Assembly (NCBI GenBank): GCA_025201805.1
Contig: MU619262.1
Location: 65,978 to 129,977, forward strand
DNA length: 64,000 nucleotides
Direction: 5' to 3'
DNA from: Parasitella parasitica NRRL 2501
Taxonomy: Eukaryota; Fungi; Mucoromycota
Shown here one piece after another: positions 60,724 through 64,000 of this stretch; the first letter of the stretch is position 1, and each line of letters starts with the position of its first letter. The notes beneath the pieces were generated by a model that was not told where the DNA came from, searched no databases, and was given only the letters and a program-made list of their open reading frames with translations. A program made the position numbers and the translations under genes.

Positions 60724-62756
60724 TTAGTTGAGATACTTTGACAATACATCGACAACATGATTCATCGATGGTCTCTAAAAGGACAGTCGTCGAAAAAGTA
60801 TGCAATATTAGCTGATTAGAGTAAAAAACAGCATCAATTAATGGACTATACGTACAAATATAGAGTCTGACTCCCACATTTCCATGATTAACACCAAAAG
60901 TTGTTGAGGGTAAATTTTACTCAGTTTACCTAGTGGCGGTCTTATCTTATCGTCCCTTACAGCAGCATATAAGGCGTGCTCTGTTAAATCTGTTGTTTGA
61001 TATATATAATTATTAATGTTTTACATAATGCAATCGCTTTCTATGTCAAAGTACCTTGATAGGGATATCCATCCTCTCCCCAGGTCAAAATTTCCCAAAA
61101 TATGAGTCCACAGGCATATACCTAATAATGTGAAATTCAGCACAACTAGATGAAAGTCGTGATTAAAACCAACCTACATCAACCTACAATAAAATAAGTT
61201 AGTTTCCAGTTACGCCGTACATGTGTTGGGGGTTTGATATTTACTTTTTCTGAATAACATGGATCGGTTGACCAATACTCTGGAGCTAAGAATATGATAA
61301 GTTGTTGGCTCGTTGGAACAAATTCCAGCACGTAAAAAACAAATATATATACCTTGCCTAAGTAAACAAATGTTAGAAAATGTAAAATGTATTTTGCATT
61401 TGTAGGCAGTTCTTACCAATTTGGGGTTCCACAATGCGTGTGCATCATTATATTTGCTTTTGGGCGTATTCTAGCAAGCCCAAAATCATTCACTTTGGCT
61501 CTATCATCCCCTGAAATCTACAAAACTGTTATTCAATCTGTGATTTACAAAGAAACGTAATAGCACAAACCAAAATATTCATTGATTTCAAGTCCTAACA
61601 AAGTGAGTCATTTAGCTCTCGTTAAAAATTATGTATACAAAATATACAGTTTCTTACTCTATGTATGATGGACGGTCTGATGAATGATATATACAAGTAT
61701 TACTAAACTGTTGAGTTACAATATTTCAAATATAAATTTATATACCTTCTTGTGTGCAGATATGACACTCCCAGCGCTATATCATACATATACATGATCT
61801 ACATTTTGCTTTTGTGAATATCTACTGTTTGTTATTTGAAAAAAGAAACCTATGTATTACCAGTTGAGAAAAGTTGGGTTTTTTGTAGCATCTAATAACG
61901 TCAAACAAATCTCCCTTCGCACATAATTCAGTGATAATACACAAGTGTTGAGGGTGCGTGCACACGCCAATAAAGCGAATAACATTTTCATGTCGCAATT
62001 GCCTAGTATAAGGTATGACTATATATCTCTTTTTTTGATAAAAAATATTACAGTTTTGTCCTGTACTCACTTTAAAACGTTGATCTCGTGTCTAATCTCA
62101 TCAAGATCCACTTGGTTGAAATGTGTTAATCGCAATTCTCCTACCGCAACAGTTTTCTGATAAATCACATTTAATAAGCTCATAAGGCGCACACAATTAC
62201 AATTAAACACTCACTCCTTTATATATGCCTAACGATGCCGAAAAATTTTAGTATATATGTCAAATATATTGTTTATATAAACTATTTACCAGCATAACAA
62301 TCTTTAAACCCTCCACTTCCCAGTTTTTTCCCAATATCTAATGCATCAAATGGAATGTCAAAATCAGGGTTCTTGTCGTCCAAAAACAACATTGATAAAT
62401 CTCGAGAGTTTAATTCTAGTCGTTGCTGAGGAGGCAGGGTGGAAGACGAGTCTGGCAGTAGCTCTAATGCTGTATATAGCCTTGGTGTAGAAGGTGCAGG
62501 TACCAATCGAACGTTTTCTTTCTGTGAATGACAAATGTTTGAGAAGATGAATCTTGTCAGTGTCAAATACATGTATCCCTACCCAACTAAGCAAATCATC
62601 AATTAATTCTGTTTTTGCTCCCTCAGTTTTTAAGCCTAAAAGTACTATAGTTTAATATTCGTTTTCATGAACAATAGTCATGTTTATACCTCTTTCCTGA
62701 CAGTACTCAATAATATCTGCTAGCATTAATTTGTCCAGCGAATCTCGGTCAATCAT
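60724..62756 (-). CDS. Protein kinase with TKL-like core, WNK-type lysine placement and N-terminal SAP-like domain; about 16 exons, 5' end uncertain
   Basis: Hand-spliced: LDKLMLADIIEYCQERGLKTEGAKTELIDDLL; LGSGGFKDCYAGIYKGKTVAVGELR; HENVIRFIG; LHTRRPSIIHRDLKSMNIL; DFGLAR; CGTPNWQAPE; KVDVYACGLIFWEILT; RPSM..LN*. Confidence 0.88.
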
Positions 62757-63232
62757 CTGCAATTGAAGATACCGTTTGTCAATCATTCCACAAGGAACGT
62801 CAGTTGTAAATCATTAGTGTGCGTATTACCTCTAAAGATGGATCAACATGTCTGTTTAAAGTCTCGAATATCATTAAATTTGAAAAAGAAGCAAAATGGA
62901 GAAAAGACAGAAAGCATGTATCTTAAATGGCTTGCCATCAGCTGATAAAGGGTTCCCTGGCCGAGATACATCAAGATGGTGACACACCATGTGATTGCAT
63001 GATGATCCGTCCAGCCACAACTCACATATATTAAATGTTACCATGTAGAAGAGCCAATCTTTATTTTATCAAGCAAGCAGCAGCAACAACAGAAATAGCA
63101 ATAATTATTATATATGTAGTAGAAATAGTAGAATTCTTAGATGTAATTGTTGGATCTTGTCTTCTAAGCACTCAAAAATAGAAATGGAATTAGGCTCCTC
63201 GCTCTCCAAGATAAACTGTAGTATAAATGTAT

Positions 63233-64000
63233 TTACCTGTTATAAGCAGGCTCCTTGGCATGCAGTGTTTTCCAACTGTTACTAACAAAAAGTGTGTTGC
63301 TTTTCAAGCTGGACACAATCCAATCTCCAACAGTAAGACCACCAAATAAAGGTAAAACACCAGCACCTTGCTTTCTCCCAAAAGTAACAAACATGGCATC
63401 TGGAATCTTTTTGTATTCGGCCGTTGGTTTTTTCTTTTTGACAGCAATCTGCACAATATTCTCAACTACAACGGGCGCATGTGCACCGATACGATAAGCC
63501 AACTTGGTTTCGTTGAAATCAGCAGCATCCCCTAAAACAAACACATTGGGTAAACCAGCATGGTCTACTTGGAATGTCTTCTTGACCTTGATGTAACCAT
63601 TTGTGTTTACAATCTCGGCACCGAGGGAAGAGTTCTTTAACCAAGCTGTCTCAGGACGATTACCAAAAGCCAGCAACACAAGATCCACATTTTCAATCAT
63701 CTGTCCCTTGTTTGTTTTAACGATACCTGCTTCAGGGATGTAAAAATGTTCCTTGAGATCACTGGGTAAATTGACAGTATCGTTAAAGATGGTATCGATT
63801 TTGTTCTTTTGTGCCAAACTCAACAAGTTTTTTCGTAATTTAGCATTGGGGCTGCTCGCTTCGTCCAAAAAGTTATCCTTGCCATGTACAATTGTGATTT
63901 TCTTCTCAGCATAAACATCACGGATCTCACCGGCCAATTCGATACCAACAGGACCACCACCAACAATCACAATAGAGTTTGCAGATTTGACACTGGCACG
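63233..64000 (-). CDS. AIF/AMID(FSP1)-like FAD/NAD(P)H oxidoreductase, 5' truncated by the window edge
   Basis: SIVIVGGGPVGIELAGEI, KKITIVHG, GYIKVKKTFQV, NVFVLGDAA. Confidence 0.88.
   Translation of the reverse strand, partial: RASVKSANSIVIVGGGPVGIELAGEIRDVYAEKKITIVHGKDNFLDEASSPNAKLRKNLLSLAQKNKIDTIFNDTVNLPSDLKEHFYIPEAGIVKTNKGQMIENVDLVLLAFGNRPETAWLKNSSLGAEIVNTNGYIKVKKTFQVDHAGLPNVFVLGDAADFNETKLAYRIGAHAPVVVENIVQIAVKKKKPTAEYKKIPDAMFVTFGRKQGAGVLPLFGGLTVGDWIVSSLKSNTLFVSNSWKTLHAKEPAYNR

What the first reader, a model, noticed from the sequence alone, without database searches (positions are those of the whole stretch)
62130..62330. Fungal kinase with WNK-style displaced catalytic lysine on a TKL-like scaffold
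Seen: the beta-3 VAIK lysine is replaced by Gly (VAVGELR; GGA at 62139-62141), while a Lys sits at the end of the Gly-rich loop (GSGGFKDCY; AAA at 62303-62305). Established: this is the WNK arrangement (GRGSFKTVY...VAWCEL), and WNKs are absent from model yeasts. HRDLKSMN and DFG are intact. DFGLAR, GTPNWQAPE and IFWEILT look TKL/Raf-like and lack the WNK chloride-sensing DLG. Inference: an active, uncharacterised kinase that is either a divergent fungal WNK relative or a convergent 'with-no-K' kinase, not a pseudokinase.
Basis: partly seen in the sequence, partly recalled or inferred. Interest (0 to 1): 0.8.

Follow-up and report, generated by a model that had tools for sequence, protein, structure and literature searches.

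The report
Fungal SAP-domain kinase with relocated lysine
This mould gene encodes a DNA-tethering (SAP) domain joined to a Raf/CTR1-like protein kinase whose ATP-anchoring lysine sits in the glycine loop, as in human WNK kinases. About 250 fungal relatives share the arrangement, so a family that sequence surveys would score as dead kinases is probably active.

Summary
Codons AAA 62303-62305 (glycine-loop Lys) and GGA 62139-62141 (Gly where the beta-3 Lys should be) lie in one minus-strand gene of 17 exons and 379 aa in Parasitella parasitica.

This is not a private mutation. A paralogue in the same genome and 249 of 251 aligned family domains carry the loop Lys, and none has a beta-3 Lys (Gly, Ala, Cys or Ser instead). 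The alpha-C Glu, HRDLK..N and DFG are essentially invariant. The family (SAP motif plus kinase) spans Mucoromycota, Zoopagomycota, all three basidiomycete subphyla and an aphelid.

It is not the fungal WNK. The genome has four true WNK genes (the PkpA family) with CCT-like domains and DMG/DLG.

Sequence, fold, Pfam balance, indels and hallmark motifs all place it with TKL kinases, with CTR1 the best match. However, an AU test cannot reject a sister relationship with WNK (p 0.52), so independent origin is likely but not shown. Activity is inferred, not tested.

I found no paper describing the family. This scan earlier noted the same lysine arrangement in a different, bromodomain-linked kinase of this genome. 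I could not test whether the two are related.

The parts
60724..62874 (-). Whole coding region of the SAP-domain kinase gene: 17 exons, 379 codons plus stop
   Evidence: Exon model built from the window. It is gapless against the intronless orthologue ORF P0164/L007 and matches the public Parasitella annotation P0241 except for three micro-exons that the annotation skips.
62830..62874 (-). Exon 1 (MIFETLNRHVDPSLE), start codon at 62874-62872
   Evidence: Present in P0241 and P0164; donor GTAATA.
62690..62756 (-). Exon 2, first half of the SAP motif
   Evidence: acceptor ...TTGCAG, donor GTATAA.
62583..62635 (-). Exon 3, second half of the SAP motif
62583..62738 (-). SAP motif, residues 22-55 (LDKLMLADIIEYCQERGLKTEGAKTELIDDLLSW), split by one intron
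   Evidence: Pfam PF02037 scores 21.4 bits for P0241 and 23.5 for P0164, both just under the 23.9 cut-off, and 31.2 bits for the Basidiobolus member. About 45 of the 120 listed relatives have a precomputed PF02037 hit. The AF2 model shows helix 27-36, a loop, and helix 45-58.
62290..62521 (-). Exon 4: disordered linker, beta-1 and the glycine loop GSGGFKDCYA
   Evidence: The linker (residues 60-99) has pLDDT below 50.
62303..62305 (-). AAA, Lys128, at the third-glycine position of GxGxxG (beta-2): the proposed catalytic lysine
   Evidence: Lys in 249 of 251 family domains. Same alignment column as the WNK loop Lys.
62300..62302 (-). GAT, Asp129, directly after the loop Lys; a family-specific conserved residue
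   Evidence: Asp in 244 of 251 domains. WNKs have Val, Ile or Thr here.
62215..62228 (-). Exon 5, 14-nt micro-exon (G)IYKG
   Evidence: The segment is present in P0164 (GFYKG) and absent from the public annotation P0241.
62071..62156 (-). Exon 6: beta-3 (KTVAVGELR) and helix alpha-C
62139..62141 (-). GGA, Gly143, in place of the canonical beta-3 (VAIK) lysine
   Evidence: It aligns to the Lys of CTR1 VAVK. Family-wide the residue is Gly 108, Ala 74, Cys 34, Ser 33, and never Lys.
62085..62087 (-). GAG, Glu161, the alpha-C glutamate that partners the catalytic lysine
   Evidence: Glu in 256 of 257 domains.
61861..62002 (-). Exon 7: beta-4, beta-5 and the hinge
   Evidence: Pfam PK_Tyr_Ser-Thr E 1.7e-8 on this exon alone.
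61746..61798 (-). Exon 8 (helix alpha-E, YLHTR)
61658..61676 (-). Exon 9, 19-nt micro-exon (R)PSIIHR
   Evidence: junctions confirmed against P0164.
61571..61594 (-). Exon 10, 24 nt, DLKSMNIL: catalytic Asp238 (61592-61594), Lys240, Asn243
   Evidence: HRD in 252 of 255, Lys in 257 of 258, Asn in 258 of 258.
61417..61517 (-). Exon 11: DFG (Asp256 at 61485-61487) and the activation loop
   Evidence: DFG in 262 of 262.
61353..61357 (-). Exon 12, 5-nt micro-exon inside GTPNWQAPE
   Evidence: The segment is present in P0164 and missing from P0241.
61245..61285 (-). Exon 13 (APEYWSTDPCYSEK)
61178..61183 (-). Exon 14, 6-nt micro-exon (VD)
   Evidence: Present in P0164 and missing from P0241.
61055..61121 (-). 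Exon 15 (VYACGLIFWEILTWGEDGYPYQ), with the TKL-type 'WE' of helix alpha-F
60856..60989 (-). Exon 16 (alpha-G to alpha-H)
60724..60774 (-). Exon 17 (RPSMNHVVDVLSKYLN, stop TAA), with the TKL-type RPS[MF] of subdomain XI

Best explanation
The gene encodes a 379-aa protein made of an N-terminal SAP (helix-loop-helix, DNA/chromatin-tethering) motif, a disordered linker and a TKL-type (Raf/CTR1/MLK-like) Ser/Thr kinase domain. It belongs to an old family found across fungi outside the Ascomycota sampled here. In this family the lysine that normally sits in strand beta-3 (VAIK), holds the ATP phosphates and pairs with the alpha-C glutamate has been replaced by a small residue (Gly, Ala, Cys or Ser). 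A lysine is fixed instead at the third-glycine position of the glycine loop (strand beta-2), the exact position used by WNK kinases. Proposed mechanism (inferred): the beta-2 lysine reaches over the small beta-3 residue into the active site and does the job of the beta-3 lysine, so the enzyme is an active kinase and not a pseudokinase. The SAP motif would place it on DNA or chromatin. It is not the WNK orthologue and keeps DFG, so WNK-style chloride sensing is not expected. The lysine relocation most likely arose independently of the WNKs on a TKL scaffold in the fungal stem lineage. What is shown: gene structure, family membership, co-conservation, purifying selection and distinctness from the WNKs. 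What is inferred: catalytic activity, the role of Lys128, nuclear or chromatin localisation, and independent origin.
For: Gene model and splicing. A paralogue with the same two residues. Family-wide co-conservation (249 of 251 loop Lys; 0 beta-3 Lys; alpha-C Glu 256/257, HRD 252/255, Asn 258/258, DFG 262/262). Purifying selection against the orthologue (pN 0.071, pS 0.83, saturated). Taxonomic range (Mucorales, Mortierellomycotina, Glomeromycotina, Kickxellomycotina, Entomophthoromycotina, Paraphelidium; Puccinio-, Ustilagino- and Agaricomycotina). TKL affinity: the best solved sequences are CTR1 (156 bits), DLK, TNNI3K and B-Raf, with no WNK in the top 60; Foldseek's top hit is CTR1, with no WNK among the matches listed to rank 50; Pfam PF07714 scores about the same as PF00069, whereas the WNK favours PF00069 by 47 bits; the Atlas neighbours are plant TKL, RIPK2, MOS and STY46-like clusters; identity to TKLs exceeds identity to WNKs in both lobes; 10 indel blocks are shared with TKLs against 1 with WNKs, plus the WE and W..RP[ST][MF] hallmarks; sources label members 'TKL' or 'TKL/TKL-ccin protein kinase'. 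Distinct from WNK: four true WNK genes in the same genome have GKGAYK, EVAWN, DMG/DLG and CCT-like domains, score 258 bits to WNK3/WNK1, and are named pkpA or WNK by sources. Precedent that a beta-2 lysine can be catalytic: WNK1 and POMK, reviewed in PMC10211241 and PMC13686953. SAP.
Against: No activity data exist for any member. By the sequence definition it is a pseudokinase. Independent origin is not demonstrated. With the two trait columns removed, the maximum-likelihood tree groups the family with TKLs at only SH-aLRT 94, and a tree that forces the family and the WNKs into one clade is equally likely (delta lnL -0.18, p-AU 0.52). Within this genome the four WNKs are its nearest kinases (90-107 bits against 71 or less for the rest). 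Seven conserved residues, including the EKVDxYA motif, are shared with WNKs only. The SAP hit of this particular protein falls just below Pfam's cut-off. The reference set lacked non-fungal WNKs, NRBP and named TKL families.
Confidence: 0.72

Rival explanations
1. The family is a deep sister lineage of the WNKs, so the relocated lysine was inherited from a common ancestor (one origin), and the TKL-like features are either ancestral or secondarily acquired.
For: The AU test does not reject a SAP-kinase + WNK clade; the constrained tree is even 0.18 lnL better. WNKs are the nearest kinases within the genome. There is 35% identity over 195 residues, with a shared LHxxxPxIIHRD[LI]K and EKVD[IV]YA. 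SAP-kinase/WNK identity in the C-lobe (0.32) exceeds WNK/TKL identity (0.28). The lysine occupies the identical column.
Against: Every similarity measure puts TKLs ahead of WNKs. The indel count is 10 to 1 in favour of TKLs, including the short beta-2/beta-3 turn, where WNK matches the generic kinases. There is no CCT-like domain and no DLG/DMG. From general knowledge, WNKs occur in plants, animals and fungi, whereas this family was found only in fungi plus an aphelid. A sister lineage of equal age would therefore need to have been lost everywhere else.
Confidence: 0.22
2. It is a true pseudokinase. It may bind nucleotide but does not transfer phosphate, and acts as a SAP-tethered scaffold or allosteric regulator.
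For: The beta-3 lysine is absent in all members. Fungal TKLs are reported to contribute many sequence-defined pseudokinases (PMC10211241). There are no activity data.
Against: Pseudokinases normally let several catalytic motifs drift. Here the alpha-C Glu, HRD, the catalytic-loop Lys and Asn, and DFG are all invariant across some 250 sequences spanning the Mucoromycota-Basidiomycota split. In addition, a lysine is fixed at exactly the position that WNK1 and POMK use catalytically, paired with a small residue at beta-3.
Confidence: 0.1
3. It is a private mutation, a sequencing error or a mis-spliced gene model in this one assembly.
For: None found. The public annotation of this gene does contain splicing errors, but they lie elsewhere in the gene.
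Against: The paralogue, about 250 homologues and an intronless transcript-like contig all carry the same arrangement.
Confidence: 0.01

Closest known systems
WNK (with-no-lysine) kinases, including the fungal PkpA family
   Same: A lysine at the third-glycine position of the glycine loop (G-x-G-x-[FY]-K) and a non-lysine residue at beta-3, in the same alignment columns. Shared LHxxxPxIIHRD[LI]K and GTPxxxAPE motifs, with 35% identity.
   Different: There is no CCT-like/autoinhibitory domain (PF12202, PF24889). DFG is kept where WNKs have DLG or DMG. The C-lobe is TKL-type (WE, W..RP[ST][MF]), the beta-2/beta-3 turn is shorter, and there is a SAP motif at the N-terminus. True WNKs are present separately in the same genome in four copies.
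TKL group MAP3K-like kinases: Arabidopsis CTR1, B-Raf/C-Raf, DLK (MAP3K12), TNNI3K
   Same: These are the best sequence and fold matches. They share domain boundaries, most loop lengths and the hallmark motifs of subdomains IX and XI. The balance of Pfam PK_Tyr_Ser-Thr and Pkinase scores is comparable.
   Different: All of them keep the canonical VA[VI]K lysine and a glycine (or Ala/Ser) at the third G-loop position. None has a SAP motif. The family has its own insertions in the activation loop, after the APE motif and after helix alpha-F.
POMK (SGK196)
   Same: A second documented case in which the beta-3 lysine is missing and a beta-2 lysine is required for activity (PMC10211241).
   Different: POMK is a sugar kinase that has also displaced its HRD and DFG equivalents. 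Here every other motif is canonical.
'TKL-ccin' class of KinBase/Kinomer-based annotation, and the FslK lineage (PMC3937382)
   Same: Basidiomycete orthologues carry the automatic label 'TKL/TKL-ccin protein kinase'. Like FslK, it is a fungus-restricted TKL-like lineage absent from the Ascomycota sampled.
   Different: FslK is reported as lost in Ustilaginomycotina and Pucciniomycotina and strongly expanded in Agaricomycetes. This family is present in both of those subphyla, with only one or two copies seen in the genomes checked. No paper found mentions the lysine relocation or the SAP motif.
Bromodomain-linked kinase of the same genome (earlier scan note s1-703545)
   Same: It is reported to have Gln at beta-3 and a Lys in the glycine loop, to be conserved in zygomycete fungi, and to be joined to a chromatin-reading domain.
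   Different: It is a different gene with different accessory domains. I could not locate it, and its relationship to this family was not tested.

Membership tests
WNK kinase family | Catalytic lysine in beta-2 (the G-loop) and no lysine at beta-3 | tested here: met
   Lys128 and Gly143 fall in the same columns as the WNK K and N/A.
WNK kinase family | Kinase domain most similar to WNK1-4 among all kinases | tested here: not met
   P0010 and P0164 hit CTR1, DLK, TNNI3K, B-Raf and ABL, with no WNK in the top 60. The genome's real WNK scores 258 bits to WNK3/WNK1.
WNK kinase family | CCT-like/autoinhibitory domain (PF12202 or PF24889) directly after the kinase domain | tested here: not met
   There are no such hits in P0241, P0164, P0152 or P0110, and the protein ends about 10 residues after subdomain XI. 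The WNK P0274 has both domains.
WNK kinase family | DLG in place of DFG (the chloride-binding activation-loop start) | tested here: not met
   DFG in 262 of 262 family members. Fungal WNKs show DMG 107 and DLG 13.
WNK kinase family | Forms a clade with WNKs in a phylogeny | tested here: inconclusive
   The free tree puts it with TKLs (SH-aLRT 94), but the AU test does not reject a clade with WNK (p 0.52).
TKL (tyrosine-kinase-like) group | Best sequence and structure matches are TKL kinases | tested here: met
   CTR1 is top by phmmer and by Foldseek. The Atlas neighbours are TKL clusters.
TKL (tyrosine-kinase-like) group | TKL/TK hallmark motifs: W-E in helix alpha-F, [CM]W...RP[ST][FM] in subdomain XI, short beta-2/beta-3 turn; HRDLK..N (Ser/Thr type) in the catalytic loop | tested here: met
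   Alignment and character counts.
TKL (tyrosine-kinase-like) group | Monophyly with canonical TKLs to the exclusion of other groups | tested here: inconclusive
   SH-aLRT 94 in the quick tree, and the alternative is not rejected. No named reference TKL families were available.
SAP-domain proteins (PF02037) | Significant match to the SAP profile; helix-extended loop-helix of about 35 residues | tested here: met
   31.2 bits for the Basidiobolus member, above the 23.9 cut-off; 23.5 and 21.4 bits (E 4e-5 and 2e-4) for P0164 and P0241. About 45 of the 120 listed relatives have a precomputed hit. The AF2 helices at 27-36 and 45-58 have pLDDT 82-88. Borderline for this one protein, but clear for the family.
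Pseudokinase (sequence definition) | Lacks at least one of the beta-3 Lys, the HRD Asp or the DFG Asp | tested here: met
   The beta-3 Lys is absent. The definition is met formally, but the compensating loop Lys and the otherwise invariant catalytic residues argue that the label is misleading here.
Active protein kinase | Demonstrated phosphotransfer | not testable with these tools
   Requires a biochemical assay.
FslK lineage (PMC3937382) | Sister to tyrosine kinases; absent from Ustilagino- and Pucciniomycotina; expanded in Agaricomycetes | tested here: not met
   This family is present in Malassezia, Ustilago, Tilletia, Puccinia, Rhodotorula and Sporobolomyces. No FslK sequences were compared directly.

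The most novel reading that the evidence does not exclude
A fungus-wide, chromatin-tethered TKL kinase family independently re-invented the WNK solution of moving the catalytic lysine into the glycine loop. Together with WNK, POMK and the bromodomain-linked kinase of the same genome, this would make beta-2-lysine catalysis a recurrent evolutionary route rather than a WNK peculiarity. It would also mean that part of the large fungal 'TKL pseudokinase' count is really active enzyme, with an unusual ATP pocket that animals lack outside the WNKs.
Probability: 0.5. Interest if true: 0.7.

Novelty: new variant of a known kind. Interest (0 to 1): 0.6.

Why it matters
Relocation of the catalytic lysine is textbook-rare, with WNK as the defining case and POMK a second. 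A third, well-conserved family on a different (TKL) scaffold would show which features of the arrangement are mechanistically required: a lysine at the third-glycine position, a small residue at beta-3 and a retained alpha-C glutamate. It would also show which features are WNK-specific, namely DLG, chloride sensing and CCT domains. It warns that sequence-based pseudokinase censuses over-count in fungi. The family occurs in Mucorales, Malassezia, rusts and smuts, and no animal or ascomycete member appeared among the relatives listed. Its atypical ATP site and its SAP tether therefore make it a natural subject for ordinary functional work such as knock-out, localisation and inhibitor selectivity. 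The work also corrects the public gene model, which skips three micro-exons inside the kinase core.

Tried and rejected
(1) Searches failed on a minus-strand coordinate slip, which I corrected.

(2) Exon-by-exon Pfam scans were mostly too short to score; only exon 7 passed. Family-level tests therefore used the public orthologues P0164, P0241 and P0010.

(3) The idea that this is the fungal WNK or PkpA was rejected. PkpA-named proteins are the true WNKs of Mucorales, and four such genes lie elsewhere in the genome.

(4) The idea that the WNK resemblance is N-lobe convergence around the lysine was not supported. The N-lobe is the most TKL-like part, and the extra WNK similarity lies in the C-lobe.

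(5) Phylogenetic resolution of one origin against two failed. The AU test gave p 0.52, and I did not run a longer 'careful' search because the two topologies differ by only 0.18 lnL.

(6) FslK (PMC3937382) was considered as the known name for this family and rejected on taxonomic distribution.

(7) I tried to locate the bromodomain-linked kinase of note s1-703545.

(8) Literature searches for WNK-type lysine in fungi, 'TKL-ccin', SAP plus TKL, and pseudokinase surveys found no description of this family.

(9) The apparent exceptions (two 'Q' loops, K/T, K/Q, one K/K) turned out to be truncated or mis-spliced models, or an unrelated degenerate domain.
Full report
Observation. On the minus strand the window carries an intron-dense gene. 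I built an explicit model from the window sequence. It has 17 exons between 62874 and 60724, every intron is GT-AG, and the product is 379 aa. AAA 62303-62305 is Lys128 in GSGGFKDCY, and GGA 62139-62141 is Gly143 in VAVGELR. One correction is needed: a 14-nt micro-exon (62228-62215) lies between the two pieces, so the protein reads GSGGFKDCYAGIYKGKTVAVGELR. Micro-exons of 5 nt and 6 nt also lie inside GTPNWQAPE and KVDVY.

I searched exons by reference. For full-length work I used public proteins returned by the tools. The joined sequence was built only inside local scripts, from window.fa, for alignment, dN/dS and trees.

Is the gene model right? The public annotation of the same gene (P0241, Parasitella parasitica) is identical to my model except that it skips the three micro-exon segments (GIYK, CGTPNWQA, VD) and adds the 15-aa first exon that I then included. 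An 88%-identical orthologue, P0164, is encoded as an uninterrupted 379-aa ORF on a 1266-nt Logan contig (L007, run SRR3993924). That contig is too short to hold 16 introns, so it is transcript-derived. P0164 aligns to my model without a single gap and matches on both sides of all 16 junctions. Non-synonymous divergence is 0.071 while synonymous sites are saturated (pS 0.83), which means strong purifying selection.

Is the arrangement private? No. The 32.8-Mb genome has one paralogue (contig C115) that reads GSGGFKDCYEG...VAIGELR. An exhaustive profile-free search with the paralogue's 71-aa core exon and two word searches with full-length members returned a large family. Of 251 family domains with both positions aligned, 249 have Lys at the third-glycine position of the loop and none has Lys at beta-3, where the counts are Gly 108, Ala 74, Cys 34, Ser 33. 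The four deviants are N-terminally truncated or mis-spliced models, and the single K/K hit is an unrelated degenerate domain. The alpha-C Glu (256/257), HRD (252/255), the catalytic-loop Lys (257/258) and Asn (258/258), and DFG (262/262) are all retained. An Asp directly after the loop Lys is a family signature (244/251). The canonical-lysine relatives in the same hit lists almost all show G, A or S in the loop together with Lys at beta-3.

Who has it? Names supplied by the sources place members in the following groups:
- Mucorales, Mortierellomycotina and Glomeromycotina;
- Kickxellomycotina and Entomophthoromycotina (Basidiobolus, Massospora);
- the aphelid Paraphelidium;
- as longer proteins of 700-1250 aa, all three basidiomycete subphyla (Puccinia, Austropuccinia, Rhodotorula, Sporobolomyces, Microbotryum, Malassezia, Ustilago, Tilletia, Trametes, Mycena, Schizophyllum and many more).
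No ascomycete, animal or plant member appeared among the 240 listed hits. The one exception is a fern record that is 66% identical to the Malassezia protein, which looks like fungal contamination. Absence from groups that were not listed is not proven.

Architecture. Many relatives carry a precomputed SAP (PF02037) hit. A direct scan gives 31.2 bits for the Basidiobolus member (cut-off 23.9), 23.5 bits for P0164 and 21.4 bits for the window's own protein. An AlphaFold2 model of P0164 built with a 62-sequence family alignment shows helix 27-36, a loop and helix 45-58 at pLDDT 82-88. The linker at 60-99 is disordered, the kinase core is confident, and the activation loop has low confidence.

Is it a WNK? 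A search of the genome for the WNK/OSR1 CCT-like domain (PF12202) found three loci, each just downstream of a kinase. Their ORFs read GKGAYK...EVAWNTM...DMG followed by a CCT-like domain, and they score 258 bits to human WNK3 and WNK1. A fourth WNK gene lies on contig C2. Their relatives are named 'pkpA', 'WNK protein kinase' or 'WNK lysine deficient protein kinase' by the sources. This matches a 2023 paper that cites PkpA for three Phycomyces WNK sequences (PMC10301571). The published fungal WNK is therefore that family, not this one. The SAP-kinase has no CCT-like domain and keeps DFG.

Where does the kinase domain belong? Six lines of evidence point to TKL:
- The closest solved sequences are CTR1 (156-161 bits), DLK, TNNI3K, B-Raf and ABL, with no WNK in the top 60. 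The CTR1 alignment puts the family's Lys on the third glycine and its Gly on the VAVK lysine.
- Foldseek on the model again ranks CTR1 first, followed by Src-family kinases, B-Raf and TNNI3K.
- Pfam's PK_Tyr_Ser-Thr and Pkinase profiles score about equally for the family, whereas the WNK favours Pkinase by 47 bits.
- The language-model neighbours are plant TKL, RIPK2, MOS and STY46-like clusters.
- Mean identity to canonical TKLs exceeds identity to WNKs in both lobes, at 0.33 against 0.27 in the N-lobe and 0.34 against 0.32 in the C-lobe.
- Ten length differences group the family with TKLs against WNKs, and one groups it the other way. Two of the ten, including the short beta-2/beta-3 turn, are states where the WNKs agree with generic kinases. 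The TKL hallmarks WE (alpha-F) and W...RP[ST][MF] (subdomain XI) are present.

Against this, the four WNKs are the family's nearest kinases within the genome (90-107 bits, against 71 or less for the others). The two families share 35% identity and the LHxxxPxIIHRD[LI]K and EKVDxYA motifs.

I built a maximum-likelihood tree (LG+C20+F+G4) from 42 family members, 11 fungal WNKs, 27-32 canonical TKL-like hits and 8-10 generic kinases of the same genome, with the two trait columns removed. It recovers the family (99-100) and the WNKs (99-100) as clades, and puts the family with the TKLs at SH-aLRT 94. However, a tree that forces the family and the WNKs together is just as likely (delta lnL -0.18, p-AU 0.52).

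My reading is that the family is a TKL and the lysine moved independently. This rests on the discrete characters, and on the point that a sister lineage of the pan-eukaryotic WNKs should not be confined to fungi. It remains an inference at roughly 3 to 1, not a result. The reference set had no non-fungal WNKs, no NRBP and no named TKL families.

Mechanism. What is shown is a lysine fixed at the WNK position, a small residue fixed at beta-3, every other catalytic residue invariant, and purifying selection. Established knowledge adds that in WNK1 and in POMK the beta-2 lysine is required for activity (PMC10211241; PMC13686953). The inference is that Lys128 substitutes for the beta-3 lysine, so the protein is an active Ser/Thr kinase, and the SAP motif tethers it to DNA or chromatin. 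Because DFG is kept, the WNK chloride site that involves the DLG start of the activation loop is not expected here.

Novelty. Sources label members only as hypothetical, 'kinase-like', 'TKL protein kinase' or 'TKL/TKL-ccin protein kinase'. Searches of the paper library found no description of the lysine relocation or of the SAP fusion in this family. The fungal FslK lineage is a different group on taxonomic distribution. The same review notes that fungal TKLs supply many sequence-defined pseudokinases, and this family would be among them. This scan had already noted a WNK-style lysine in a different, bromodomain-linked kinase of this genome (s1-703545). I could not locate that gene to test kinship.

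Verdict. The refinements are that this is a conserved SAP-TKL family, distinct from the genome's four true WNKs, probably active, and probably an independent lysine relocation.

Noticed in passing
window 60724-62874 (minus strand): The public Parasitella parasitica protein for this gene (P0241, 366 aa) skips micro-exons of 14, 5 and 6 nt. It therefore lacks GIYK, CGTPNWQA and VD inside the kinase core, and its Pfam kinase score drops from about 170 to about 130 bits.
   Followed up: yes
G000 contigs C42 (~132.6-133.6 kb), C73 (~103.1-104.2 kb), C123 (~36.7-37.6 kb), C2 (~177.9-178.5 kb); loci L004-L006, L038: The genome has four true WNK genes (PkpA family). Most fungal WNKs in the hit set have DMG rather than the DLG of animal WNKs (107 against 13), and Asn or Ala rather than Cys at the beta-3 position. 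Whether they still sense chloride is an open question.
   Followed up: partly
window 63233-64000 (minus strand; runs off the window end): This is the 3' part of a neighbouring gene whose ORF starts with a GxGxxG Rossmann motif (IVGGGPVGIELAGE). By eye it looks like an AIF-like FAD/NAD(P)-dependent oxidoreductase. I ran no search on it.
   Followed up: no
P0429: A 1040-aa protein deposited under the fern Adiantum nelumboides is 66% identical to the Malassezia family member. This is most simply explained by fungal (basidiomycete) contamination of the plant assembly.
   Followed up: no
P0034, P0063 and similar: The nearest canonical-lysine relatives of the family's core exon are TKL kinases of protists (Fabomonas, the oomycete Aphanomyces) and of giant viruses (Moumouvirus, Pandoravirus). 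No close canonical-lysine fungal relative was seen.
   Followed up: partly
Alignment (columns before HRD): SAP-kinases, WNKs and canonical TKLs all share a two-residue insertion (LHxxxPxI[IV]HRD) that the generic Ser/Thr kinases of this genome lack. This fits the tree's grouping of WNK next to TKL plus SAP-kinase (SH-aLRT 92).
   Followed up: partly
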